A DNA stretch of 64,000 nucleotides from Asterias rubens (GCF_902459465.1 NC_047070.1:19282001-19346000), one strand, 5' to 3'. Positions 28,961 to 61,739 are shown, numbered from the stretch's first letter. Made by a program: numbers and translations. The notes: generated by a model not told the origin, from the letters alone.

Positions 28961-31900
28961 ATGGCCATTAACTTCTGCAGTCATGAATATGGCACAATAG
29001 TCACAACAAGTTCTGTGAGTGCAGATGGATACGAAGTAGACAACTTACTTGGGAAGGCTAAGACAATGTGGGGCCAGCCCAAAGGTTTTGTTGCAGAGAG
29101 CTTCATCAAACCCCCTGTCGACATCAACCTCATGTTTCGATTCAACGTATGGATTCAGAAGATTGTAATTGATCCTAAAGTAGGCAGTCAGATGTCAGGA
29201 GGGGTAGAAGTGTTTACAGCCTCCGTACCAATGAGCAACCAAAAAGGAATTCCTCCTGAAGATAAAGAACGTAAAGATTGTCCTGAAAAGCCATCTTTAA
29301 GAAACCAAAGTGGTATGCAGTCGGAAAAGAAGGAAGCTGTGTTTGCAAGTGTTGGCAGAGCTTTCTCCACAGACAAAAACACAACAAGTTTCTGTTTTGT
29401 AAATCACGGTTACCAAGCAATTTATACTCCGACTACAAGTAATCGGCATTCAGATGAACCCTCTTCTTCAAGACCAGGGGAAGTGAAAAGGTTTCTACGC
29501 AACTCTCAATTTGGTGCTTTGACTAATGTAAGTCACATGACACTGCGGATCAATCGTGTCATCAGTGGATCTGTCGCTATAAAATGTGTTCAAGTTTTGG
29601 GACAGCCTTCTAGAAACTGCTCCAAGCAAACGATTCATTGGGTTCTGCAAGTCGCAAACTCTCAGAATCCACTGAAGACTAAGGTGAAACCTCACTGTGT
29701 TACAAAGAAAGCTGAGCCTACCAAGGAAACCTTGAGACATCACGCCAAGAAAGTCCTAAATTCTGTCAATGAACAAGGTTGCCCGGAGGAGTTCATGGAC
29801 CCCATTACTAATGACATGCTGATACTTCCAGTTTTATTACCATCTGGTCACACCATAAACAGTGAAACCTTGACGAAACACAGTGAAGCAGAGGCTGTAT
29901 GGGGGCGCCCTCCGAATGATCCATTTACCGGGATACCTTTCTCCCAGAACAGTAAACCTCTTCCTAATGTGATACTGAAAGAGCGGATTGATCAATATAT
30001 ACTAAAAGGTGGGAACAGCGTGTCAGTTGGAGCTAGAGATGTCGGTAGATCGAGTAATAGAACCTCAAACCAAGCAATACATGTACCTACAGCAGCATCT
30101 CTTGTATGTCATCCAAGAACTAAATGTATTTCACTCATCAAAGAAGAGGATAGTGTGAAACCTTTAAAAGCACCAAACCTTGATCAAAGCAACAGTAATA
30201 ACATCAGTACCTCAGGTAGAACACCTTCATATCCAGAAAGCAGAATTTCTAGTGCAACATCAAAGAGGAAGTTTCCTGTAGAATCTAGCCACCGTTCTAT
30301 GACCAAGAGAAGACTACTTACCAACCCAAAGAATAAGGAAGAGGTTTCTGATACTGGACCATCAAGTTCGTCTTCACTCCAAGGTATGGGGGGGGGGGGG
30401 TGTACAGATGGAATGCTTGGTTCACTTCTTCTAATAAAATTCAAGACTTGTTGATTAACAGGCCTGATACTTCAGTGAGGCAAGGTGCCTTTGAATTGCT
30501 CCAGTACAAATTTGCAATTTCCTCATAAGGTGCCCTTTACCAAGAATCAAATGCCTTGGTGCCCTTGCCCTTTCAAAAACGAAGCATACAGGCCTGGATT
30601 AAGTACTAGTTATCCTTTCTAAAACCTATAAATTGAAAGTGGGAAGTACTTTATATGATCTGTATTCAAAATAAGAACAAACAGGTTTTATTCCAAATTG
30701 CATTGCCCAATTGAAATTATTTCAGAAAGTCTTTGGAATGGTTTTAATACTGGTTTTCAGAATTGTGAGAATGGGTATGGTCTAAAATTATCTTCCCACC
30801 CTTGATGATGAAAACAAAGTTACTTTACTGCCTCAAAAAGTCAATGTTTTGTTGTTGATTTTTTTTTTAAAGTCAATTTTATGTTTATATTCACAGCTTC
30901 CACAGTCTGTCATGAGGACATGTTATCTCAGAGTCTGGATGTAGCTTTGGAAGAGGCGTTATCTTCGGTACCATCATTCAGCAGAAAGGCACATTCCAGT
31001 ACTAGCACAGGTAAACAATTATTAAGTATGAGGAAGGTGCAAGCATTCCAATGTTCTAAATGATGAAGGTGCCAAAACTAATGTTCTAAATGGATCTATG
31101 GATCATAGTATGTATTTGCTTTTGTTGTCCCTTGCCCATCTCGGGGTATTATTGTCAATGTATTATGTTTTGAACTGTTATGGCAAATAAAATAATAAAT
31201 AATAATAAATGATGAAGGTGCCAGCATTCTACTGTTCCAAATAATGAATAAAGGTACCAGCATTCCAAGGTTCTAAATGATGAAGGTGCTAGCATTCTAA
31301 TGTTCTTAATGATTGATGAATGTGCCAGTATTCTAAAGTTCTAAATGATAAATGAAGGTGCCAGTGTTATAAGGTTCTTAATGGTAAATGAATGTGCCAG
31401 TATTCTAAAGTTCGAAATGGAATTGAATGAAGTTGTCAGCATTCTAAAGTTTTCAATGATAAATGAAGGTGCCAGCATTCTAAGGTTCCAAATGACGAAT
31501 AGAGGTGCCAGCATTCTAATGTTCTAATGATGAATGACGGTGCCAGCACTCTTACGTTTTAATTGATGAATGAAGGTGCGATTAATCTTGCATTCTTAAT
31601 GATAAATGAAGGTGCCAGCATTCCAATGTTCTAAATGATGAATAAAGGTGCCAGCATTCTAATGTTCTAAATGATGAATAAAGGTGCTAGCATTCTAAGG
31701 TTCCAATGATGAATGAAAGTACTACGAATGAAATAGTCTTTATGGGCCTATACATTTTAAAATACTGAAGTCCAATGCAAGTGTATCTATTTATTTCTTC
31801 AGATCAAGAAGTCTCCAACAGATGGTCCTGCGCTGCTTGTGGTAATACTATAGCAACCAAAGAAGGTTACCATGTCAACGGGCCCATCAACATGTATAAG

Positions 31901-44541: not shown

Positions 44542-44764
44542 TTAATCACAAATGTGCACTTGAACTTTGTTCACATGTTTCAAACACAATTCAGTCATGA
44601 CAAAGATGTGTTGAACATGTTAGAACATGTTTGTTGTTGCCACTGCTGGAATTAATTATTAATTATTACTCAACAAGTTTCATTTTTATCTCAATAGATT
44701 GAACTGAATCAAGGGTGCCTACTGATAGTGATAGGGTACAAGCTGAAGTATTCTTTCATTCATT

Positions 44765-47700
44765 ATGGCTGATGTTACTAAGCGGCGATGTATCTTTATC
44801 TCAAATTTACCTCCGTCTATTTCATCATCAGCCTTAGAATCCTTTCTTCTACAAGGTATGTTAGTATCACATTCTGGTATGCTTAGTATTTTGAAAGGGC
44901 AAGGGCACCAAGGCGTCTTCTCCTCGGTAAAGGGCACCCATAAGGAAGTTGTGAACTTCTATCGGAGCATTTCATGGGCAACAAGGCAATGACCAGGGGG
45001 CACGGAAGCAATCGCCTTCATTGCCTCCTTGCAGTATCAGGTCTGGTATATCATAGCGCATCTGATAGGGCCTTGTCACTAGTATTAGTAATCTTGACAA
45101 ACAATTTATAGGGGCAACTTTTATGTTATATGAGCACCGTGGTCGCACAATAGAAATGTTTTGTTTCATGTCTTACTACAGTGAAGGACATTATGTGAAC
45201 ATTGAAATGTGAATGTGTTTTCTAATATTGGAAATTACTTGGCACTGGTTGCCTCATGAAACATAGTGTCGTTTGTTTTTAATGTTATTCTTATATATTT
45301 TTTTCTTGAAGAGCTGGAATCATGTTATCATGGTGGCAGCCATCTTATTAAGGTGATGTTTCCGGTCAATCCTGCTACACCTGGTTTAGCATTGGTGACA
45401 TTTCAAGATGAACAAGGTATGTGAAAGTCAGTCATTATGAAAAGTTTATCAGGAGAGTTCTTAACTCTGAATGTCTGAATGTTTTGCTCTAACTATCCAT
45501 GAAGTTGAAAAGGAAATAAACTCATACGTTGTATGATTTAGAAAATCAAGGACCTGTGGCGACTCGATTGAAATAGTTTAACACTTTTTTTTACAGTGTG
45601 TAGCTCTCATTATTATTTGAAATTTATCAGACCTGGAATTTCACGGAGGTCATATGCCTCCGTTGCATTGGCCTTGGTGCCCCTTCAAAAAATTCCCCAC
45701 AGACTTTAAGATTTTATAATGGAAGTACCTAGCAAGTGCCCATTTCAAAATGACAATGGCCTTTTTTATAGTTTAATGATGTGAAGTTTGGTTACTTCAT
45801 GAATGTCATAAGAAGTATAAATCTGTGTGTAGTAAATAATAATAATAATAATAATAAATAATAATAAACAAGACCTATAAAGCGCATTTGCATTTTAAAG
45901 CACCTGTCATGATTAGTGATTGGAGATTTATTATTTGTTTTTTTGCTAGCGATGGTTCGTATTCTGAGGAAGAGGTTGATGTATGAAGGAGTACTCTTAT
46001 CCACACAGCCATTCCTCTCTTATGTGAGTCAGTCTTCATTGTGCAGAAAACTAACAACCATCGCTTAGGGAGCTTGTGTGAAACGGGCTTGTAGAATGAG
46101 TCTTAAACAAATTCTCATAGATGCCACTGTATAGCATGTGGATATTACCAACAAATGGACCAATTGTGATTTAAAAACTTGTTTGAAAAGTTAACATCTT
46201 TGCAAGAAATGCTCAGTTTAAGATTATGGAAGTTGTGTACATGTTTGGTCAATTTAAAAAGAGAGTGTATACACAATATTTCTTTAGTGAAATGGGTTGA
46301 TGATTTTCAAAAAGTATTCTGTTTTAAATGGTTAAAGAATGGCGTTGACATTTAAAATGTTTTCTATAAATCAAATGACAAATTGGTTTTAAGTGACCTC
46401 AATGTTTGATAAAGAAGACTTCATTTAATGAAAGAAAACAAACTATATCGGAACTAAGCTTTTAATACAGCAGTAATGAAATATCTGTTTTTTTATTTCG
46501 CTCACTTCCATTCCTACTTTCCATTTGTACAGGTTTTTACCTCCATGAGTGCAGTGGTCAACCCAGATGTCTCACATCTCTTTCCCTTCACGTCCCGTGA
46601 CTTCAACTGTCATATGGAAAAAAGCTGTGGTGTTGAGTGTCATAAATTAGACGAGAAGGAACGAGACAGGTGGATGCATCATTCTCAGACTAGTCAGAGT
46701 GAGCTTTTCATGCTGACAGGTAACTGGTTTCAGATGCAGAATGCCAGGAAGTTCATGCAGGAATGGGTAGTAGATGAAAAGAAGAGGTCAGAATTCATGG
46801 ACCAAAGCCACCTTATTAAAGATGAAAGTAATCAAAAAGGAGCTTCCTCTCGCAAACATTCAAAGAGGAGGGAGAAAGAACTGGCAACTGGTTTGGGTAA
46901 TTCTGTGGAAGAAAAGGGAGTTCACAGAAATGGTGCTCAAACGGAAGTAAAAAGACACACTGAGGTCACTGATTCTGCTGGCCTCTTAGAGAGAAAAAGC
47001 CCAACTGGTAATACTGATTTCAGAAGTGGCAAGAAGGATAGAAGCAAAGCTAAAAAAGAAGGGTTGGCTAAAGTTGCTTGTAGATTTGATGGTGAGCCTG
47101 TGCAGCCAAGCACCGGGAATCATTTTGAGCAGGATGATCTTAACCTTGATGCTGCACCTCATCTCACAAGTAATTTTGCCCAAGATGGAGTACGTCAAAC
47201 TTCATCTGAAGACATCACAAGTCATGGAGATCCTTTGCAGAGCTCTTCATCTCAAAATTCGGAACATATCAGGAATCAACTGGCAGAGCTTTCATCTACT
47301 TTATCAAGCAGAGCAGTCATCCCTAGAGTTAGAAAACCTACTCGCCCTCCTAGGTCTGTGGATACAAGAAAAAGTGATTTGGGAAGTGTCCCTAATGTTG
47401 ATTATATGCAGTATGTCAAGATTCCTCAAACGTCAGGAAGCAGTAGCTCCCAAGAGCTTAACAAATCCAATGAAATGAGAGGCAACTCAAAGAGAAGTGA
47501 AGATGTATCTATGACGAAGCATCAAGAAGATGAAACACTTCTTACACGGAGAGAAGAGCCTGATGTGTATGAAGGTCTGATGACACAAAGTCGAAATGAA
47601 GGTTTGATGTCACAAAGGCGAGATGAAGGGATGCCGTCACAAAGACGAGATGAAGGGATGCCATCACAAAGACGAGATGAAGGGATGCCGTCACAAAGAC

Positions 47701-50700
47701 GAGATGAAGGGATGCCGTCACAAAGACGAGATGAAGGGATGCCGTCACAAAGACGAGATGAAGGGATGCTGTCACAAAGACAAGATGAAGGGATGCGGTC
47801 ACAAAGACGAGATGAAGGGATGCTGTCACAAAGACGAGATGAAGGGATGTCGTCACAAAGACGGGATGAAGGGGTGCCATCACAAAGACGAGATGAAGGG
47901 ATGCCGTCACAAAGACGAGATGAAGGGATGCGGTCACAAAGACGAGATGAAGGGATGCGGTCACAAAGACGAGATGAAGGGATGTCGTCACAAAGACGGG
48001 ATGAAGGGGTGCCGTCACAAAGACGAGATGAAGGGATGCCGTCACAAAGACGAGATGAAGGGATGCCGTCACAAAGAGGAGATGAAGGGATGCTGTCACA
48101 AAGACGAGATGATGGGATGCCGTCACAAAGACGAGATGAAGGGATGCCGTCACAAAGACGAGATGAAGTGATACCGTCACAAAGACGAGATGAAGGGATG
48201 CCGTCACAAAGAGAAGAACTTGAAATAGATTGCCCTGAACCTCTCCCATCATCGCCATTAGTCAGTGAGAGGCATAATGTTGATGAAGAGAGTAAAGAAC
48301 AAAAAGAAAGCCTCAGCTCCATTCCTGTCGATCCCGGTGTCTTTAGTTACATCTTACTAAAACAGAGTGACTCCATTCAAGAAATTGAAGAGACATACAG
48401 TGTCAAGTTTTCAATTCAGACAACAAGAGATGGTGAGGATGGCGATGTTGAAAGTGCCATGCTTATGGTTAGATCCCTGGGTGAAAACTCTGACATCGGT
48501 ACAGCACATGATAAGTTTGTGGATCTGTACACAGCTGTTTTCTCCGACTTAAAACACAGAGTTGTCACTTTTGAAGACAGAACCATTGATCCAGAATCAC
48601 TTGATCAAACTATAGAGTTGGTCCATGTTGCTTACTCTTCTGTTTTAATACTGCCTGATGTGTCAAACAAAAAGGTTCTTATTTATGGACCATCTGAAAT
48701 TGATGTTCGTTTTGCAAAATGCTGGATACAGGATGCAATAAAGAAGCAGAAAATAAACATCCAAGGAGAGGTCTCTGGGGACGCCAGTGAAACTAATGCA
48801 GAAGATTTTGTTTCAAGAAGGGTGGACTATGGCCAATCAGTACTTCAGGAACGAGCAACCCGGCCACATCACAAGACTGGTGTAGACAGAAGGGTGGAGT
48901 ACGACCAATCAGTACTTCAGGAACGAGCAACCCGGCCACATCACAAGACTGGTGCAGACAGAAGGGTGGAGTACGACCAATCAGTACTTCAGGAACGAGC
49001 AACCCGGCCACATCACAAGACTGGTGTAGACAGAAGGGTGGAGTATGACCAATCATTACTTCAGGATCCAACACACGGGCCAAATCACGAGACTGGGGTA
49101 AACAGAAGGGGGGAATATGGCCAATCAGTACTTCAGGAACGATCCCAGCCACAACACCAGACTGAGGTAAACAGAAGGTTGGAGTATGAGCAACAGGAAC
49201 GAGCATCCAGGCCACATTCCCAGACTGACATAGACGGACATGATAATCGTCATTCTGTTATCAGAGGAAGTAATAATTTGTCAACAATAGACACAGAATC
49301 AATGATGAGGCCACTGGGTTTAGAGGATAGTAATGGACCAGTAGAGCATCGCTTTACAGAAAGAAGGGCTGACATTGAATCTGTTGATCAGGCTGCGATG
49401 AACATTTCTCCACGCCAGGTAGGCACACATCACCAAGTGCCTGAATTTAGTGCCCAGACATTACCTCTTAATGGCTCTGACTTGCAACATTCTGATTGGT
49501 TAGGATCAGGCAGATATAGTGGTCCACCTGAAGAGACAAGTGTGAGGAATAAGACGCCAATTGTTCCATGGACAAAAACCCCTGCCTTAGTTGTTGCTCT
49601 TCCATCATCTGAAGCTGTCAGGTCAAAGGTTAACAAACCTGCTGAAATGGTCTCTGAGCCAGAAGTATTACCAACGACGGTAGAAGCAGTCAGTATGACG
49701 GACACAATTCCCGTTGACCCTGGTGTCTATGGCTATATCCAATTGAAGAAACCAAACATTCTTTGTGATATTGAACAAAACTACAACATAAAGTTCTCTG
49801 TTGAGGGAGATCGAGACAGCGATATTTACTTCATTCGAGTGGAGGCAAATGGAGCTGTCTCTGAGCAAAGCATTCAAAAAGGCAAAGAGACTTTCTTGAA
49901 CTTTTACTCTGAGATTTTCTCAGGGCTCGTTCATCGTGCCATAAACCTGGCAGATTTTGAGGGTTTGTCTGAAAAGGTTTTGGAAGAGACTATCCAAGAG
50001 GCTGAGCACTCGTTCAGTGATGTTTATTTTGCAGTTGTGCAGTCTAAAGTTCTTATCTTCGGTCAGGGGTTGCATAATGTAGAAACTGCAAGAGATTTTG
50101 TCTTGAGTCGATTACGCCAAAGTGACAAATCTCTGGTAGAGGTAAGACCACACACGGATCTTGAGGTCTCAATGGAGAGTCTCAGTAATGATGAAATGGT
50201 GAGTCGTCTTAATCATCTAAGATGTGGATCTATGACACCTGATAGACAGACAGATATACATGTAGCGAGTCAAAGACAAACTGTTGCTGAGGAGGTAAAT
50301 GGAAGGACTAGAGTTGACATGATTGATCAAACTTCAATCAATGATGAGGCCACAGAATCAATGATGAGGCCACTGGGTTTAGAGGATAGTAGTGGACCAG
50401 TAGAGCATCGCTTTACAGAAAGAAGGGCTGACATTGAATCTGTTGATCAGGCTGCGATGAACATTTCTCCACGCCAGGTAGGCACACATCACCAAGTGCC
50501 TGAATTTAGTGCCCAGACATTACCTCTTAATGGCTCTGACTTGCAACATTCTGATTGGTTAGGATCAGGCAGATATAGTGGTCCACCTGAAGAGACAAGT
50601 ATGAGGAATAAGACGCCAATTGTTCCATGGACAAAAACCCCTGCCTTAGTTGTTGCTCTTCCATCATCTGAAGCTGTCAGGTCAAAGGTTAACAAACCTG

Positions 50701-53700
50701 CTGAAATGGTCTCTGAGCCAGAAGTATTACCAACGACGGTAGAAGCAGTCAGCATGACGGACACAATTCCCGTTGACCCTGGTGTCTATGGCTATATCCA
50801 ATTGAAGAAACCAAACATTCTTTATGATATTGAACAAAACTACAACATAAAGTTCTCTGTTGAGGGAGATCGAGACAGCGATATTTACTTCATTCGAGTG
50901 GAGGCAAATGAAGCTGTCTCTGAGCAAAGCATTCAACAAGGCAAAGAGACTTTCTTGAACTTTTACACTGAGATTTTCTCAGGGCTCATTCATCGTGCCA
51001 TAAACCTGGCAGATTTTGAGGGTTTGTCTGAAAAGGTTTTGGAAGAGACTATCCAAGGGGCTGAGCACTCGTTCAGTGATGTTTATTTTGCAGTTGTGCA
51101 GTCTAAAGTTCTTATCTTCGGTCAGGGGTTGCATAATGTAGAAACTGCAAGAGATTTTGTCTTGAGTCGATTACGCCAAAGTGACAAATCTCTGGTAGAG
51201 GTAAGACCACACACGGATCTTGAGGTCTCAATGGAGAGTCTCAGTAATGATGAAATGATGAGTCGTCTTAATCATCTAAGATGTGGATCTATGACACCTG
51301 ATAGACAGACAGATGTACATGTAGCGAGTCAAAGACAAACTGTTGCTGAGGAGGTAAATGGAAGGACTAGAGTTGACATGATTGATCAAACTTCCAGGCA
51401 TTTTGCTGTGACTGAAGAATCTCCTCTCAAACGTTATTTGATATCGCCTCAAGATGAGAACAAACCCAATGACGAAACTGACCATCCCAAACAGTATGGA
51501 ATTAATAACAATATGACTGCCTGTTCCACTGGTCCTACTGACATTTTACTCCACAGCGATAGAAAGAAAGACCGTACAAAAACTGAAGAATGTGTTTATC
51601 AATTCTCTGATAGCCGATTGCTGATTCAGCTGCCAGTATCAGGGATGGGTGTTCAAGTCTACACTGCCGATATCACAAGGACGGCAGTGGATGCCATTGT
51701 TAGTGCAGCAAATGAAAAACTAACTAATATTGGTGGTGTTGCTGCTGCGATATGTCATGGAGCTGGTGCAGAGCTTCAAGCAGACTGCAACATGCTCATT
51801 GCCCGCCATGGCCTGCTGTACCCTTCAGAGGTGAAATACACTGGTGCTGGGAGACTGCCGTGCAAATTTATTCTCCATGCTGTGGGGCCAAGGTGGCACG
51901 ATTATGCAAACGAGCAAGATTGTCGTCAGACGCTGAGGTCAACCGTGGTGAATTGTCTGAGAATAGCAGATCAAGAGTTGCTAGTCAGATCTTTGGCGAT
52001 GCCTCTTATTAGTTCAGGTTCGTGGATTCTCTGTTATGTATAGTTATCAAACCATGTATGAAAACAATTCAAAATAAAAAAGCCAAACTGTTCTAACTAG
52101 TTTTGTATTCTCAAGTTTGAAATGCATTTATGATTTCCTAATCTAGAATAGATCTGAATGATGTATTTCTAGATGGATTTCTCATTATCAATGTATTTAA
52201 TTCAGTTCAGTTCAATTAATCTTTGTTAGATCCCAAAAAGGGTTATTCAAATACTCGCATACAGTAAAAATGTTGTCATATTAAAAACATTAAACACAGA
52301 CAAGGGCTATATACAATTACAAGAAAAACCACTAAAATGTGATAAGAAAATTACCTGTTGATTTGGTGATAATTAATATTATGGAAAGAATAACACATAC
52401 AACCTTTTTTTGTTAACAGGAATATTTGGGGTCCCGTTTGAAATCTGTCTTGAAGAAATCTGTGAGGCTCTACGTGAATATAACAACAATCGACAGTCAA
52501 TCAAAATCCTACAGCAAGTTCATATTGTGGACCTGGATGGTTCAACCATCTCAAAGGCTCAAGATGCTATGATTCATAGGCTGTGTACAAACGGAAGTGC
52601 AGATGAGAACAATCTAAGGACTGGTGAGAAGGCTACAAGACGAGGTTTCTCATCACAGATTGATCCTGTAACCTACAGTCATACCACAGTTGGAGATGAA
52701 CGTCTTAGTGTGGGTAGTGAAAGCTCAAGAAGGAGCAGAAGAGAACATGAGCCAAGAAGGACATCTACAAGATCTTCAAGGTCTTCAGTAAGACATCTTG
52801 ATTCATCCGATGAGGACGTTCCTCAGCCAAGTAGTAGCTTCAGCCGTCCAGTCATGGCCAGGAGTTCATCTCTTCCGTACTTGGCAAGAAATTATGATAA
52901 GGATCAAAGAAGAAATTGTTGGTCATCTGAAACAACAGATAAAACGACAACAGGTAACCGTCGCTCCTTCCTAGATACAGATCAGAGATCATGGAGTACC
53001 AGCCGAACAGCATCCAAAGTTTCATCTCGATCTAGTAGTAGAGATGATAAGATTAAGGATCTTTTAGAGGCTCATTCTAAAGCTCCTCCCTCACCAGAGA
53101 TGTCAAGAAAAACTCAATTTGAGATCAATCGTGTGTTGACTGAACCAATAGTGACTCCAAGAGATAAACAACGTCCTAAAGCCAGGCGCAGTCAAAGCCT
53201 TGGTCGGACTGTTTCTGGAGACAAATGTGTTGTCTGCTCATCACAAAAAGACCTTTCCAAGCGGAAATGTTGTGAACATTTTGTGTGTGGCTTATGCAAA
53301 TCATCTAGGTTGGATGTTGGAAGGTGTAGACAATGCTCTGAGCTTAAAAGTAAGAAGAAAAAAATGTGTGATTTCTGTACCTGCTCCACTGACTACAAGC
53401 TGATGAGTTGTAGGAGTTGTACGAACCCCATATGTTATAAATGTATTCAGAAAAAACTTGAGGTTTGCAGGGACTGTTTAGAACAAGCTAATCCATTACC
53501 AAATGGTCACGGAGAAAAGAAACAGCCCAGGTTGAGAGAGCCTATCATTGTTGGAACACAAACATCTCACCTTGACGCTAAGAAAAGTTATCGCATCAAG
53601 TCAGGAACTCAAGATTTAACCTCATCACGTAAGAAACCAATGCTTGGGCGTAGTCAATCTGGTGATGTTTCTCAGAGTTATTCATCAAGCGGCAGAAGAC

Positions 53701-56661
53701 ATGATTACAAGACGTCTGGGCGCACAAGCTCAGCATTCTCTCATGAGTTTGTTACTGAACATGCTGAAGATGCCCCTCATGATGAGATGATAAGAAACTT
53801 ACAAGAACCAAAAGGTCAGGAGGCAAGACCACATCATCGGAGTAAAAAAGGGAACATCAGAAATGAAGATTCAGCAAGGAGTGCACCAAACTCAAGGAGG
53901 CATGCTAAGGGAGACAAAGAGGTAAATGTCATTGGGAAGAGTTCTGTGTTGCAACCTAATCCGGTTACCTGCGTTATCTGCATGGAGACAGCTACGAATC
54001 CCAAAGAGCTCAACAAGTGCAGGCATATATTCTGTGGCGAGTGTATTGACAAGGCATTTAAGGTAATCTTCATTAATTTTGTTTACCCCAACAGCTTTTC
54101 TTTAATAGATGTTAGATTTGCATCGGGGTGACGAATATTTAAAAACATTTTTTTTTACCCATACACCGATGTGTGTTAGCACTATTTACTGAGTACTTTC
54201 GCGAGTCCCCAGTAAAAAAAAAATCACAGGCATGTTTTTACTCCGGTGGGATTTAAACCCACGACCCGTGCAATTCTAGAGCAGTGTCCTACCAAATAGA
54301 CTACTGTGGTTGAATCTTTGCTTACTGTCCTGCACAGCTAGGTAAAGTCTGCTGTAGAAACATAATGGGAACAGTTTACTGTAAGTTAGGATGGTGCTTA
54401 AAAGAACTTGTGTAAGAATTTGCGTTTATATTTTTGGAGAAGTTTGGGGCATAACAGGCTTGGAGTTACACAAAGGTCATGCTGGTCATAGTCTCTTTTG
54501 CCCTAGTCTTGGCCTTGGTGCCCCTTCAAAAGTTCCCCATTTTCCAATGGAAGTGCCTTTTTCAAAATGAATATGGCCTTGCCCGCTCAGAGATGAAACT
54601 CCAGACCGGTGCATACTAATGAAAAATTATATTCTTCATAACCTGAGGCAAACTGTTTAATCCCACTATATGCAGATCAAGCCTGTATGTCCGATCTGTG
54701 GTGAGAGTTACGGCAAACTGAGGAGTGGGCAGCCCATTGGTACCATGACGGATGCTGCTGTTTCAACAGATCTACCAGGCCATCCTGGTTGTGGAACTAT
54801 CATCATCAACTACTCGTTTCCAAATGGCTTTCAAACTGTAAGTACCTCAAAATATACCACTGAAAACCGGATTTGAGAATATTTATTTTTTTTTTTTTAC
54901 CCATATACACTGATGTATACTCAGTTCTTTCCTGAGTCCTGTGGAAAAAAACACAGGCATTTTACTCGGGTGGGTTTCGAACCCACGACCTTGCAATTCT
55001 AGAGCAGTGTCATACCAACTATTTGAGAAGTGTACTCTGTTTATCAATGGCTCATGAGTCAACTTATTGAAATGTGGTACTGAACTTTTTCACTAATAAC
55101 TCGCACACTTATGAGCTATTTAAACATGTATCTAAAAACTCCAACAATTTTATCAAGCTAAAACTTTTTAGTCAAAATGACCAGGAGAGTGAGGTTACCA
55201 GTGGCAGTATTCCATGAAAAAAAAAAAACCATAACAAAAAAACAAACAAATAATAATAGTTTCAAAGTCTTATATAGCGCACGTATCTACCAAAGAAGGT
55301 ACTCAAGGCGCTGAGTATATACAAACTTTCAAAAAGATTGCAGTGTTGAATTCTGAGACCCAATTATTTAGCACCTTATACATGTTATAAGGGTTTACAA
55401 GGTGCTACGGCGCATACAGCAGCCACAGCCAGGAACACCGGGTCAAACCCCTTCTCTTTTCGATAAGTGCACTGGGTTCTTTTACATGCGTTTACACAAC
55501 ACATGGGACCAACGGCTTTACGTTCCATCTGAAAGACGAAGCAATGGTTATGTCTTGCTTAAGGACACTAGTGTCACGGCTGGGGATTCGAACCCACACT
55601 CTGCCGATTAGCAACACCAGAAACAACAGAGTTTGAATTCGATGCTCTTAAACCGCTCGGCCACAACACTTCCAATAAAAACCCATATCAAAAGAAATCT
55701 AACGGATTAAATATTCTACTTGATTACAAACAGGAAGACCATCCTAATCCAGGGATGGCTTATAGAGGCACAGATCGCCAAGCTTACTTACCTAATAGCA
55801 GGGAAGGGGCAGACGTCTTAAAGCTGCTAAGACAAGCTTTTGATGCTGGTCTTCTCTTCACCATCGACCGCTCGGTTACCACAGGGGAGGAAAATGTTGT
55901 CGTTTGGAATGATGTACACCACAAGACGAGGCGAGACGGAGGAGCAGAGATGTAGGTTGAAAGTTTATGAGTAGCATCCAGTTTCATAAATCTGCTAAGC
56001 ATAAATATATAGAGATGTGTATTGAAAGTTCATGAGTAGAGTCAAGTTTCATAAATCTGCTAAGCATAAATATATAGAGATGTGTATTGAAAGTTCATGA
56101 GTAGAGTCAAGTTTCATAAATCTGCTAAGCATAAATATATAGAGATGTGTATTGAAAGTTCATGAGTAGAGTCAAGTTTCATAAATCTGCTAAGCATAAA
56201 TATATAGAGATGTGTATTGAAAGTTCATGAGTAGAGTCAAGTTTCATAAATCTACTAAGCATAAATTTACTGTTTATTTGTCCCAGGAAAGCAGAATTAA
56301 GATATTATAAATCATTATAAAGATTGTTTATAAAGCATCCATGACTTGATTCCAAGGCCCACTGTACATACTTAAATGGCACCAAACAAAAGGATGAAAT
56401 AATCCAACAGCATTAAGAGATGACATAAAATATTAAACCCCAATCCGGCCTAGCCAAGAATTAAAACTACAGGTAAAGTTTGTAAAAAGGACCCCTCAGT
56501 TAAAGCAGTTTGTTTTTAAAAGGAGATCAGTCATAAAACTTGTTTCCAAATAAAATAAAAAATATATATATATATTTTGTTTTCTAATCAGGCATGGCTA
56601 CCCAGATCCGACCTATCTACTGAGAGTGAGAGATGAACTTGAAGCAAAAGGCATCCGTTGA
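44765..56661 (+). CDS. DTX3L/PARP14-like multidomain protein, ~2,615 aa: RRM, KH-like modules, coding tandem repeats, macrodomain, Cys-rich fingers, RING-HC, Deltex C-terminal (DTC) domain
   Basis: Exons 44765-44855, 45312-45416, 45950-46023, 46533-52017, 52420-54062, 54676-54837, 55734-55951, 56592-56661 (7848 nt, phases consistent). RRM-like IFISNLP...GLALVTF. Macrodomain ADITRTAVDAIVSAANEKL..GGVAAAI...ILHAVGPRW...MPLISS|GIFGVP, with the motif completed across an intron. RING CVICME...CRHIFCGEC...VCPIC. DTC QPIGTM...HPNPG...AYLP...VVWNDVHHKT...HGYPDPTYL. The start codon and first three small exons are less certain. Confidence 0.88.
47610..48212 (+). repeat. Coding 27-bp minisatellite, ~22 copies of SQRRDEGMP
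   Basis: TCACAAAGACGAGATGAAGGGATGCCG unit, read directly in the 5.5-kb exon. Confidence 0.97.
48817..49235 (+). repeat. Coding 72-bp repeat (24 aa), 3 near-identical and 3 degenerate copies
   Basis: RRVEYDQSVLQERATRPHHKTGVD units. Confidence 0.9.
49292..51394 (+). repeat. Coding tandem duplication, period 1,059 bp (353 aa)
   Basis: 49292-50335 is repeated at 50351-51394 (ESMMRPLGLEDS...MIDQTS). Confidence 0.97.
54145..54305 (-). mobile_element. Second tRNA-derived SINE family (2 copies)
   Basis: TTTTTACCCATA(C/T)AC...CTCCGGTGGGATTT(A/CG)AACCCACGACC...GCAATTCTAGAGCAGTGTC; second copy at ~54890-55020. Confidence 0.6.
55945..56265 (+). repeat. 65-bp tandem repeat (~5 copies) starting at an exon end and donor
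   Basis: GTTTCATAAATCTGCTAAGCATAAAT at 55981, 56046, 56111, 56176 and 56241. Confidence 0.95.
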
Positions 56662-58805: not shown

Positions 58806-61739
58806 TTAATCCTGGTGGAGTATATCATTTACTTCCTCATTATCTCCTTCCTCTTGCTCTGATTTGATATTCTGCATGATCTCCTTATGGCATAATGGGC
58901 ATGTATCTTGAACATATAACCATTTACGAAGGCATAGTGCATGAAACAGGTGTTCACATGGTGTGATTCTAGCGCTGATGAGATCTTGATAGCAAATAGC
59001 ACATACATCATTATGGTCCCTCAACTGATGCTCTGTAGCAATAGGGAGATTGTCTATCTTTTTCACTGCCATGCGACGATTCTTAAATTTCTTCCAGCCG
59101 TTCTTCCCGAGCTGAAATATGTTGAAATAGGCGTGGATTACAATCATGATGGCACGGATTACTCCGCCCGATTCAAAGATTAAGATCCACACCCCATTGC
59201 CGAAGAGGAAAATACCAAACAAGAATTCGATGGTGCTACCAGTGGCTTTAATATAATACACATAATCATCTAAACTTTCCCAGAACTTGTCGCTATAGGT
59301 ATCGATAAGAAACAAAGTGTAAATGATTAGAGTGACAGTTACTTTGATGACGAGTTCCATGCAGAAAGCAGTTACTGCTAGTAACCAAGTCCCCATGGTG
59401 AGGGAGGTCCATAGATAGCTAATCACACTGATTGGAATAAGGATGAGGATGGCAGACATGCTAAGAGCTCTAAGATGTTTCCAAATGGATGCGGTGTGAG
59501 ATGTACTAAGAGTCATCATAACTTGACTTAACATATTATGAATGAAATGTAACATGGCGGTACTGAGCAGGATGAAATTGCGGAAAAGACGGACTAAACG
59601 TTTTGTTGGCTCCAACCGAGGTAGACCAGTCTGAAGTGACAAAATGAAAAACAGTATTGCCGTGACGGTACCAATGTGTGCTACCTCGTCAGACTCGCCA
59701 CCCATAAACTTATCTGCCCATTTACCAAGGTGGTATGAGAGGTACGATACAACTGCTGTGAGGCCTAAAACTGCAAGGGTTGAATCGCAGCCATGGGTCG
59801 TTACTTCAAGAAAGGTATTCCATGCCAAAGTAGTTTCAGAATCTTCTGTCAGTTGACTTTCATTTGTTAACACATTGCTACTCATTATCACAGGCAGTAC
59901 TTCATTAGATCTTAAGGCTGGGACAATTTGTATGATGTGCACAGTGAAGCGTAGTAACCAAAATGTTCTGAGTACATTTGGAACTTGGAACTGTATCCAA
60001 GCATTCTCCAGAACTGTATTGAATCCAAAGTTCTGTAGCATAAACCGATAGGTTCGGTACCACATTGGTACGTTCCAGATGCTCCATATAATGTTAGACA
60101 CAAATATTGTAGCCACCTCCAATGCTGGGACTAAAACTGAGATGGCATTCACGGCAATGAGTGTGTTAAAGGATGGGTTGTCACTGCTGAAGTATGTCAT
60201 TCCAAGTCGTATGAACACCGGGGAAACAAAGTAGGCACATACCACGAGCCAAATATTCAGCGTAAATCTTTCTGGTAGAAGCGTTATACATGCTACATAG
60301 GTAAAAGCATAGGCCATCTGTACTACTGCATACAAGGCAAAGTCACCGCTGAGTACAATTTGGACGGGTGAAACTTTTGAAGATTCTTCACAGATGGATT
60401 CTTCTTGAAGGAGGAGATCCCACTTTGAAGGACACTTGTCTCGATTGACTTTCTCCATCATGACATTATTCCACCACAATGTGCTGCCTAACGTCCCGAT
60501 GCAAACCAGAATGGTGTAGATTTTAAGAAGCGTTCTTGTCGAGAGACAGAACATAGCGGCTGCAATGGAGACAACTGGATGACAAAGGAAAACAAAGAGA
60601 TCAATAAGATTTGGTATTTTACACAGATAGTTAAAAAGGCTATACCCTAAATATGTAGTTCAAACCCACTCCAAACCATGTGTATACATGAGACCCGCTT
60701 CGTCCATCACAATCCTTCATCAAAAGAATTGAACCATCATACAAGTTCGCTGTTTTTGAAGAGGTTCAATTGATTTTAAAGTCTGACTCCTCGAGTGGTT
60801 AAGAGCATCGAATTCAAGTTCTGGTGCTAGGTCACCGGAGTGTGGGTTCGAATCCCGGTCATGACACTTGTGTCCTTGAGCAAGATACTTTGGGAAGTGT
60901 CGTGGCCGAGCGGTTAAGAGCACCGAATTCAAACTCTGGTGTTTCTGATCAGCAGAGTGTGGGTTGGAATCCTCAGCCGCGACACTTGTGTCTTAAGCAA
61001 GACACTTTACCATTGCTTCGTCCTTTGGATGGGACGTAAAGCCGTTGGTCCCATGTGTTGTGTAACGCATGTAAAAGAACCCAGTGCAGTAATCGAAAAG
61101 AGATGGGGTTCGAGTACCTTGTTTGGTAGATACGTGCGCTATATAAGACTTTGATAGTTTATTATATTATTAATACTCCTTTATTATCTAAGGATTTCAT
61201 CAGTTAAACAGCACCATGGTATATTTATCCCAAACATTCTGCCATTGGGTTCAACGGAAAGAATTGACCAATCAATTGTGAAAAAGTGTATTGTGTTTGA
61301 AAATGTGAGAATTGCACATACATGTATATGGTATTGATTTGAGCACTGACGACCAGTGATTCCATTGAACGTAAAAAAAAACACGATTACTCCTAAAACT
61401 ACATGTATGAGGTTAAATCTGCTACTGTCGTTCGTGGAGACGATAGCGGAATGAACCTCATATAGTTCTAGGAGTAGGGTAAGGTGGCAACACTGGCAAT
61501 ATTTAGAATAAAAGAATTTCCTCAGCCACAGAAATCTATCGTTATAAGTCAATATCTCAAGAAGAAAAAAAACAAGGTTTAAATTTATTCTTACCCATCA
61601 CTGCGAGAAATCCTGACCATACTGGATACTCTATCATAAACTGACCTGTGTCTACTCGTAAGTTTACAACAGCGTCAATGATGAACAAGGACGGCACTCT
61701 AAGCACAACACTCAAAACCGCTTGTACTTTCTTGCTCAT
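58806..61739 (-). CDS. RNF139: E3 ubiquitin ligase RNF139/TRC8 (sterol-sensing-like membrane domain + RING-H2), ~637 aa, 2 coding exons
   Basis: Exons 61595-61739 (MSKKVQAVLSVVLRVPSLFIIDA; donor G|GTAAGA) and 58806-60574 (acceptor ATCCAG|TT). Multi-pass hydrophobic region with TRC8 motifs QVPNVLRTFWLLR, GCDSTLAVLG, ILSLQTGL, FWESLDDYVYY. RING-H2 CAICYQDL...CEHLFHALCLRKWLYVQDTCPLC. In-frame ATGs at 61748 and 61751 are alternative starts. A probable 5' UTR exon has a donor near 63120. Confidence 0.92.

What the first reader, a model, noticed from the sequence alone, without database searches (positions are those of the whole stretch)
44765..56661. Single polypeptide joining a PARP9/14-type macrodomain to a DTX3L-type RING-DTC ubiquitin ligase
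Seen: one ~2,615-aa reading frame with RRM, KH-like modules, a macrodomain (about 51640-52017 plus 52420-52490), a RING-HC and a DTC domain. No PARP catalytic domain is present. The ISS|GIFG macrodomain motif is completed across an intron, which ties the two large exons into one gene. Established: in vertebrates the macrodomains (PARP9/PARP14) and the RING-DTC (DTX3L) are separate proteins; PARP9 and DTX3L heterodimerise, and Deltex RING-DTC modules can ubiquitylate ADP-ribose. The macrodomain keeps the D-I, AAN, GG and GIFG (aromatic) elements associated with ADP-ribose binding and hydrolysis. Inference: this is a self-contained ADP-ribose reader/eraser plus ubiquitin writer, possibly an invertebrate innate-immune effector and a natural fusion equivalent of PARP9-DTX3L.
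Basis: partly seen in the sequence, partly recalled or inferred. Interest (0 to 1): 0.85.

Follow-up and report, generated by a model that had tools for sequence, protein, structure and literature searches.

The report
Sea-star DTX3L gene that keeps its macrodomain
This is a real, expressed sea-star gene whose single 2,615-residue protein joins an ADP-ribose-binding macrodomain to a DTX3L-type ubiquitin ligase, but the same layout is common across invertebrates and was already noted in a 2026 preprint, so it is an ordinary ortholog rather than a discovery.

Summary
Eight GT..AG exons (44765-56661, + strand) give one 2,615-aa frame: RRM, three KH-like (di-KH) modules, a macrodomain, a long linker, a RING and a DTC domain. 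No PARP catalytic domain occurs anywhere in the window. Spliced RNA contigs from three runs join exons 4-5-6-7 in one piece. The introns also cut through the macrodomain, the RING and the DTC.

- **Macrodomain:** it is of the PARP14/PARP9 macrodomain-1 type, and both catalytic loops are kept.
- **RING-DTC:** it is closest to DTX3L, and the catalytic His and Glu are kept.

This is not a rare fusion.

- About 125 of the 150 best cluster representatives are Macro+RING+DTC proteins without PARP.
- Named examples come from other echinoderms, hemichordates, amphioxus, molluscs, annelids, brachiopods and corals.
- Macro-less vertebrate DTX3L forms one group inside them.
- A 2026 preprint (10.64898/2026.04.23.720386) already says DTX3L lost its macrodomain when PARP9 arose.

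The gene is therefore the echinoderm DTX3L ortholog in what is probably the ancestral form. Its biochemistry is untested. Interest is low to moderate.

The parts
44765..44855 (+). Exon 1: start codon and first strand of the N-terminal RRM
   Evidence: ATG at 44765, donor GTATGT. Colinear with P0001 residues 1-30.
45312..45416 (+). Exon 2: middle of the RRM
   Evidence: AG/GT sites and phase fit. RRM_PARP14_3 scores 24.7 bits against a cut-off of 24 on the ortholog, which is 96.8% identical over residues 1-95.
45950..46023 (+). Exon 3: end of the RRM
   Evidence: AG/GT sites and phase fit. Colinear with P0001.
46533..52017 (+). Exon 4 (5,485 nt, residues 91-1918): disordered repeats, three KH-like modules and most of the macrodomain
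   Evidence: Uninterrupted frame. Pfam finds Macro and KH_DTX3L.
48300..48752 (+). KH-like (di-KH) module 1
   Evidence: PF21718 profile positions 1-118, E 1e-4.
49680..50162 (+). KH-like module 2, inside the first copy of a 1,059-nt tandem duplication
   Evidence: PF21718, E 8e-5. Duplication 49292-50335 / 50351-51394 is 98.9% identical.
50745..51227 (+). KH-like module 3, inside the second copy of the duplication
   Evidence: PF21718, E 2e-4. hhalign to tetrapod DTX3L residues about 236-367: probability 98%, E 7e-14. AF2 model pLDDT 88.6, with Foldseek hits to tandem-KH proteins Pno1/Dim2, Krr1, IMP1 and KHNYN.
51639..52017 (+). Macrodomain, N-terminal part, with loop 1 (Asn ... Gly-Gly)
   Evidence: Best solved relatives are PARP14 macrodomain 1 (3Q6Z, 3VFQ) and PARP9 macrodomain 1 (9QYD), E 1e-25 to 4e-32.
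52420..52556 (+). Macrodomain, C-terminal part, with loop 2 (Gly-Ile-Phe-Gly) completed across intron 4
   Evidence: Splice joint seen in RNA contigs. The full domain aligns end to end with PARP14 and PARP9 macrodomain 1. The AF2 model matches 3Q6Z at TM 0.87, rmsd 1.8.
52420..54062 (+). Exon 5 (residues 1919-2466): end of the macrodomain, Ser/Arg-rich linker, Cys-rich insert and first half of the RING
   Evidence: Open frame. Covered without a break by X1 record 1 and X7 record 17.
53970..54062 (+). RING finger, first six zinc ligands
   Evidence: zf-C3HC4 and related Pfam hits. tblastn with mouse DTX3L residues 569-600.
54676..54837 (+). Exon 6: last Cys pair of the RING and the start of the DTC domain
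   Evidence: PF18102 profile positions 3-39. Joints 54060|54674 and 54837|55734 seen in RNA contigs.
55734..55951 (+). Exon 7: core of the DTC domain, with the catalytic His
   Evidence: PF18102 profile positions 41-110, E 5e-29. Aligned to human DTX3L DTC, 3PG6.
56592..56661 (+). Exon 8: end of the DTC domain (His-Gly-Tyr-Pro-Asp, catalytic Glu) and the stop codon
   Evidence: Sequence read directly. tblastn with mouse DTX3L residues 728-747. No read evidence for this junction.

Best explanation
This is the sea-star ortholog of the E3 ubiquitin ligase DTX3L, in a form that still carries a PARP9/PARP14 macrodomain-1-type macrodomain between its KH-like modules and its RING-DTC module. That form is widespread in invertebrates and is probably ancestral. 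Shown here: one spliced transcript, the domain order RRM - KH-like x3 - Macro - linker - RING - DTC, no PARP domain, and intact catalytic motifs in both the macrodomain and the DTC. Inferred mechanism: a separate PARP14-like enzyme writes mono-ADP-ribose on proteins or nucleic acids. PMC10221186 reports PARP14-like macroPARPs but no PARP9 in Asterias rubens. The macrodomain would then bind that mark and probably can hydrolyse it from acidic residues or nucleic-acid ends, as human PARP14 and PARP9 macrodomain 1 do (PMC10499325). The RING would recruit a charged E2. The DTC pocket, with its His/Glu pair, would transfer ubiquitin onto the ADP-ribose 3' hydroxyl or onto nearby substrates, as DTX2 and DTX3L do (PMC10810221). 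The RRM and KH-like modules would give oligomerisation and/or single-stranded nucleic-acid binding. In vertebrates the macrodomain role is supplied in trans by PARP9.
For: The gene model has canonical splice sites and no stop. Spliced RNA contigs join exons 4-7 in three runs, and in pieces in a related species. The Asterias amurensis ortholog P0001 (91% identical) has the same Pfam set: RING, KH_DTX3L, DTC, Macro. The macrodomain is closest to PARP14 and PARP9 macrodomain 1 by sequence and by fold. Loop 1 (Asn/Gly) and loop 2 (hydrophobic + aromatic) meet the activity criteria of PMC10221186. The DTC is closest to human DTX3L (3PG6, E 4e-48), and the positions of H707 and E733 are kept. The KH modules match tetrapod DTX3L by Pfam and by hhalign (98%). 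The same KH-Macro-RING-DTC layout occurs in Acanthaster, Amphiura, crinoids, Saccoglossus, Ptychodera and Branchiostoma (some entries named DTX3L), and in scallops, Owenia, Lingula and corals. In the RING-DTC tree the echinoderm sequences group together, the window's protein groups with the other sea stars, and the 16 vertebrate macro-less DTX3L form one group. The preprint 10.64898/2026.04.23.720386 states that the macrodomain of DTX3L was lost when PARP9 emerged.
Against: No biochemistry was done or found for any macro-bearing DTX3L, so binding, hydrolysis and ADP-ribose ubiquitylation are all inferred from motifs. The tree has no DTX1-4 outgroup and many weakly supported forks, so 'ancestral, then lost' is a parsimony reading, not a demonstrated direction. 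The RRM call and the single KH-module calls sit at or below Pfam cut-offs. The residue at the human Y719 position is His here and varies among relatives, with unknown effect.
Confidence: 0.8

Rival explanations
1. A lineage-specific gene fusion: a PARP9/14-like macrodomain gene and a DTX3L gene fused recently in echinoderms, giving a new single-chain equivalent of the vertebrate heterodimer.
For: Vertebrate DTX3L lacks a macrodomain while PARP9 carries one. The tree is unrooted, so gain cannot formally be told from loss.
Against: The same domain order is found in hemichordates, cephalochordates, molluscs, annelids, brachiopods and cnidarians. Only 2-3 changes of the macro state are needed on the RING-DTC tree, against 14.8 for shuffled labels, and one of them is the vertebrate group. 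The preprint reports a loss in DTX3L.
Confidence: 0.05
2. An artefact of gene modelling: two neighbouring genes, a macrodomain gene and a RING-DTC gene, read as one frame.
For: One database model of a related species (P0002) stops at the end of exon 4 by reading into the intron. Low-depth RNA contigs cover part of intron 4.
Against: Single RNA contigs of 7.5 and 4.7 kb run from the macrodomain through the linker and RING into the DTC, using the predicted joints. Introns 4, 5, 6 and 7 each cut inside a domain. Exon 5 is one open frame from the macrodomain end to the RING. Orthologs in many phyla are colinear.
Confidence: 0.02
3. Same gene, different working: the macrodomain is only a reader that brings the ligase to ADP-ribosylated targets and does not erase, or the main targets are ADP-ribosylated or free single-stranded nucleic acids rather than proteins.
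For: Human PARP9 macrodomain 1 is needed for recruitment to ADP-ribose at DNA damage (PMC10499325). Macrodomain-1 activity has been lost repeatedly in mammals without loss of the domain (PMC10221186). DTX3L ubiquitylates nucleic acids (abstract of PMC11467253). The protein carries an RRM and three di-KH modules.
Against: All sequence features that PMC10221186 links to hydrolase activity are present. Motifs cannot separate binding from catalysis, so nothing here decides this.
Confidence: 0.3

Closest known systems
Vertebrate DTX3L (E3 ubiquitin-protein ligase DTX3L, the partner of PARP9)
   Same: N-terminal RRM, DTX3L-type KH-like domain, C3HC4 RING directly followed by a DTC domain, and the catalytic His and Glu of the DTC. 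It is the nearest solved and named relative of the RING-DTC.
   Different: The sea-star protein has a macrodomain between the KH modules and the RING. It also has long repeat-rich disordered stretches, a Cys-rich insert and three KH modules, and it is 2,615 aa long against about 740. The human Y719 position is His.
PARP9 and PARP14 macrodomain 1 (PDB 9QYD, 3Q6Z)
   Same: 34-39% identity over the whole domain, TM 0.84-0.87, and the same loop 1 and loop 2 motifs that go with Glu-ADP-ribose hydrolase activity.
   Different: No second or third macrodomain, no WWE domain and no PARP catalytic domain in the protein or the window.
Invertebrate 'macro-DTX3L' proteins in databases (e.g. Asterias amurensis uncharacterized protein P0001, Acanthaster planci LOC110979958, Saccoglossus LOC100368311, Branchiostoma lanceolatum entries named DTX3L)
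   Same: The same KH-Macro-RING-DTC order. P0001 is 91% identical and colinear.
   Different: Repeat content and the number of KH modules differ. Acanthaster has two modules. The window and A. amurensis each have three, but a different module is duplicated in each. Many relatives carry two to four macrodomains.
Human PARP9-DTX3L heterodimer
   Same: It brings the same two activities together: a macrodomain-1 reader/eraser and a RING-DTC ubiquitin writer.
   Different: In humans these are two chains held together by KH-like domains, with a degenerate PARP domain on PARP9. Here they are one chain with no PARP domain.

Membership tests
DELTEX E3 ligases (RING-DTC) | C3HC4 RING immediately followed by a Deltex C-terminal domain (PF18102) | tested here: met
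   RING hits on exon 5. DTC on exons 6 and 7. DTC scores 177 bits on the ortholog. Matches to 3PG6, 6Y22 and 6Y5N.
DELTEX E3 ligases (RING-DTC) | Catalytic His and Glu of the DTC (H707/E733 in DTX3L, H582/E608 in DTX2; PMC10810221) | tested here: met
   Both are conserved in the alignment to 3PG6 and in the window's own sequence.
DELTEX E3 ligases (RING-DTC) | E3 activity and ubiquitylation of ADP-ribose | not testable with these tools
   Needs in vitro assays.
DTX3L subfamily | DTX3L-type KH-like domain (PF21718) | tested here: met
   Whole-exon score is 50.6 bits against a cut-off of 27.4. Single modules score 21-23 bits, below the cut-off. hhalign to tetrapod DTX3L gives 98%, E 7e-14. Di-KH fold.
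DTX3L subfamily | N-terminal RRM | tested here: inconclusive
   RRM_PARP14_3 scores 24.7 bits against a cut-off of 24 on P0001 residues 1-200, which are 96.8% identical to the window's residues 1-95. It was not scored on the window's own spliced sequence.
DTX3L subfamily | RING-DTC closer to DTX3L than to DTX1/2 | tested here: met
   167 bits to DTX3L, against 148 (DTX2) and 126 (DTX1). All vertebrate hits are named DTX3L. No DTX1-4 outgroup in the tree.
DTX3L subfamily | Heterodimer with PARP9 through the KH-like domain | not testable with these tools
   PARP9 is reported absent from Asterias rubens (PMC10221186).
MacroD-type macrodomain, PARP9/14 macrodomain-1 clade | Macro fold, with best similarity to macrodomain 1 rather than 2 or 3 | tested here: met
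   91-126 bits to macrodomain 1, against 25-34 bits to PARP14 macrodomains 2 and 3, PARP9 macrodomain 2 and PARP15. Foldseek top hits are 9QYD and 3Q6Z.
MacroD-type macrodomain, PARP9/14 macrodomain-1 clade | Loop 1 Asn/Ser and Gly, and loop 2 hydrophobic + aromatic residue (criteria of PMC10221186) | tested here: met
   Asn-x6-Gly-Gly and Gly-Ile-Phe-Gly align with the same motifs of PARP14 and PARP9 macrodomain 1.
MacroD-type macrodomain, PARP9/14 macrodomain-1 clade | ADP-ribose binding and hydrolase activity | not testable with these tools
   Needs assays.
macroPARPs (PARP9/14/15) | PARP (ART) catalytic domain after the macrodomains | tested here: not met
   No PF00644 in the window pieces or in P0001. 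tblastn of PARP14 against the window hits only the macrodomain.

The most novel reading that the evidence does not exclude
The single chain works as a cis-coupled unit. Its macrodomain-1-type domain would hand ADP-ribosylated targets directly to the DTC pocket, or edit the product. That would make this the ancestral, minimal form of the PARP9-DTX3L machine and part of an interferon-independent antiviral ADP-ribose/ubiquitin pathway with a PARP14-like writer in echinoderms. It would also offer a simple natural model for why DTX3L needs PARP9.
Probability: 0.4. Interest if true: 0.55.

Novelty: new member of a known kind. Interest (0 to 1): 0.3.

Why it matters
The gene is a clean, transcript-supported example of macro-bearing DTX3L in a deuterostome invertebrate. 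A protein that joins in one chain what vertebrates keep on two is comparative ('Rosetta stone') support for the idea that macrodomain 1 and the RING-DTC work as one unit. That idea is currently argued from co-evolution of PARP9 and DTX3L. Such a protein could also serve as a simpler experimental model than the human heterodimer. However, the layout is common, it is present in public annotations, and it has been noted in a preprint. The value here is confirmation and annotation, not discovery.

Tried and rejected
- **Two-gene artefact:** rejected by the spliced contigs and the domain-splitting introns.
- **Recent fusion:** rejected by the breadth of the architecture and by the tree.
- **Hidden PARP domain:** none found in the introns, the flanks or the rest of the window. 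The neighbours are a UBOX5-like gene and a TRC8/RNF139-like gene, not PARP genes.
- **Immune-type promoter hint:** an ISRE-like motif scan gave two matches far away, against 2.5 expected by chance, and none near the gene. The true promoter may lie upstream of an untranslated exon.
- **Cys-rich insert (53211-53501):** no Pfam match even at E 10.
- **Intron repeats:** an ARAGORN scan found no tRNA gene.
- **Literature on invertebrate DTX3L function or immune induction:** the searches (sea star, Crassostrea, Nematostella) found nothing specific.
- **Earlier scan notes:** nothing under PARP, macrodomain, DTX3L or deltex.
- **First fold search:** it was swamped by macrodomain hits, so the KH module was modelled alone.
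- **First hhalign run:** it shared one Anolis row between the two alignments. It was repeated without that row and still gave 98%.
- **Haliotis P0198 in the tree:** my phmmer screen called it macro-less, but its precomputed Pfam list has Macro. The tree's three changes are therefore really two.

Full report
**What is there**

The region holds one large open frame of 1,855 codons (46476-52043) and a second of 573 codons (52410-54131) on the + strand. Reading the junctions directly gives eight exons, each intron starting GT and ending AG. The exons are 44765-44855, 45312-45416, 45950-46023, 46533-52017, 52420-54062, 54676-54837, 55734-55951 and 56592-56661. Joined, they give 7,848 nt and 2,615 codons with no internal stop.

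**Domains**

Pfam on window pieces finds:
- Macro (E 2.5e-22);
- KH_DTX3L (50.6 bits summed over three modules);
- RING hits at the end of exon 5;
- DTC on exon 6 (profile positions 3-39) and exon 7 (positions 41-110, E 5e-29).

Exon 8 supplies the last DTC residues and the stop.

On the 91%-identical Asterias amurensis protein P0001, which is colinear with my model, Pfam gives DTC at 177 bits, Macro at 89 bits, KH_DTX3L, RING and, at the cut-off, RRM_PARP14_3 at residues 8-91. It gives no PARP domain. tblastn of a complete PARP14 against all 64 kb hits only the macrodomain.

**One transcript**

Assembled RNA contigs were laid on 51500-55960.
- In run X1, a single 7,508-nt contig runs 51500-52014 | 52417-54060 | 54674-54837 | 55734-55952.
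- In run X7, a 4,665-nt contig does the same.
- Run X2 joins exons 5-6-7.
- A related species (X3) shows the same joints in two contigs.

Intron 4 cuts the macrodomain, intron 5 cuts the RING, and introns 6 and 7 cut the DTC. Exon 5 is one frame from the end of the macrodomain to the RING. The two-gene reading is therefore excluded. The exon 1-4 and 7-8 joints were not covered by reads. They rest on splice signals, frame and colinearity with P0001.

**What kind of macrodomain and DTC**

The macrodomain's best solved relatives are PARP14 macrodomain 1 (3Q6Z, 3VFQ) and PARP9 macrodomain 1 (9QYD), at 91-126 bits. MacroD-type enzymes score 55-70 bits, and macrodomains 2 and 3 score 25-34 bits. An AlphaFold model built on 12 orthologs has the macro part at pLDDT 82-96. 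Its top Foldseek hits are 9QYD and 3Q6Z (TM 0.87, rmsd 1.8).

PMC10221186 ties hydrolase activity to two features: an Asn/Ser and a Gly flanking loop 1, and a hydrophobic plus aromatic pair in loop 2. The sea-star domain has both. Its Asn-x6-Gly-Gly and Gly-Ile-Phe-Gly align with the same motifs in PARP14 and PARP9. PMC10499325 shows that those two human domains hydrolyse Glu-linked and nucleic-acid ADP-ribose.

The RING-DTC is closest to human DTX3L (3PG6, E 4e-48), ahead of DTX2 and DTX1. The catalytic His and Glu named in PMC10810221 (H707 and E733 in DTX3L) are conserved. The position of human Y719 is His here, and it varies among relatives between Tyr, Phe and His.

**KH-like modules**

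Each of the three ~150-residue modules scores below Pfam's cut-off on its own. A profile of these modules nevertheless aligns to tetrapod DTX3L residues about 236-367 with 98% probability (E 7e-14), after I removed one row shared by the two alignments. A model of module 3 (pLDDT 88.6) has the topology β-α-α-β-β-α followed by β-α-β-β-α. It hits tandem-KH proteins such as Pno1/Dim2, Krr1, IMP1 KH1-2 and KHNYN.

Modules 2 and 3 lie in a 1,059-nt in-frame tandem duplication that is 98.9% identical. Acanthaster has two modules, and A. amurensis has duplicated the other one. The third module is therefore recent, or possibly an assembly effect.

**How common is the layout**

- A full HMMER search of 1.84 billion cluster representatives with the macro-to-DTC part of P0001 gave 948 hits at E ≤ 1e-30.
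- I screened the best 150 with the window's own domains. About 125 have one to four macrodomains plus (RING-)DTC and no PARP domain.
- Named members come from Saccoglossus, Ptychodera, Branchiostoma, the crinoids Anneissia and Antedon, the scallops Ylistrum and Mizuhopecten, Owenia and Lingula.
- A second search adds Acanthaster, Amphiura, Haliotis, Pinctada, Potamilus and the corals Montipora and Porites. It also shows that every vertebrate relative is named DTX3L and lacks Macro.
- The ESM Atlas holds Macro+RING+DTC clusters whose commonest phyla are Nematoda, Mollusca and Cnidaria.
- In a RING-DTC tree of 49 sequences the window groups with A. amurensis, then Acanthaster, then Amphiura. The 16 macro-less vertebrate proteins form one group (support 89). 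The macro state needs three changes against 14.8 for shuffled labels. One of the three is my own false negative for Haliotis. The tree is unrooted and many forks are weak.

**Literature**

Picard et al. (bioRxiv 10.64898/2026.04.23.720386) trace DTX3L to before the metazoan radiation. [quoted passage not shown] PMC13224862 notes that PARP9 plus DTX3L together resemble PARP14 in domain structure. PMC10221186 reports that Asterias rubens has PARP14-like macroPARPs but no PARP9. I found no functional study of any macro-bearing DTX3L.

**Reading**

The gene is the echinoderm DTX3L ortholog, carrying the macrodomain that vertebrate DTX3L lacks. The most likely mechanism has four steps:
1. A PARP14-like writer makes mono-ADP-ribose marks.
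2. The macrodomain reads the mark and probably can erase it.
3. The RING-DTC ubiquitylates the ADP-ribose or the target.
4. The RRM and di-KH modules supply nucleic-acid binding or oligomerisation.

Only the anatomy, the expression and the motif conservation are shown here. The activities are inferred.

**Verdict**

The layout is the common and probably ancestral one, not a special fusion. It is a new member of a known kind, with modest interest as a possible simple model of the PARP9-DTX3L unit.

Noticed in passing
window 49292-50335 and 50351-51394: An in-frame 1,059-nt tandem duplication, 98.9% identical, that doubles one KH-like module. The A. amurensis ortholog has duplicated the other module, and Acanthaster has only two. 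It is either a very recent expansion or an assembly or haplotype artefact. The RNA contig of run X1 breaks inside the second copy.
   Followed up: partly
window 47584-48212 and 48816-49193: Two coding tandem repeats inside exon 4. The first has 27-nt units x 23 (a nine-residue Arg/Asp/Glu/Gly/Met/Pro/Ser/Gln unit). The second has 72-nt units x 5.3. Both keep the frame. The first also exists, in two places, in the A. amurensis protein.
   Followed up: partly
window 53211-53501: A Cys-rich insert in the linker between the macrodomain and the RING. Its first part has C3HC4-like spacing, and a second cluster of eight Cys follows. It is conserved in A. amurensis but has no Pfam match even at E 10. 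It may be an extra, undescribed zinc-finger pair.
   Followed up: partly
window 54033-54330, 54480-54628, 54927-55075, 55225-55671: Stretches in introns 5 and 6 with summed RNA-contig depth in the tens of thousands and many loose ends. These are interspersed repeats, some with tRNA-like box B sequence. ARAGORN calls no tRNA there.
   Followed up: partly
window 55946-56266: A 65-nt tandem repeat, 4.9 copies at 96% match, at the start of intron 7.
   Followed up: no
window 28961-30451 (+) and 58809-60554 (-): Neighbouring genes, both also ubiquitin ligases. One is a single-exon frame with DUF5918 + U-box (UBOX5-like). The other is a convergent frame with TRC8_N + RING-H2 (RNF139/TRC8-like). No PARP gene lies next to the DTX3L-like gene in this window.
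   Followed up: partly
window 55952 onward (run X1 record 1): The 7.5-kb RNA contig continues about 4.4 kb beyond exon 7. That would reach across the convergent TRC8-like gene. It means either a very long 3' UTR or overlapping 3' ends merged by the assembler.
   Followed up: no
window 44685-44700: A polypyrimidine tract ending in AG lies about 65 nt upstream of the start codon. It may be an acceptor site, which would put an untranslated first exon and the promoter further upstream.
   Followed up: no
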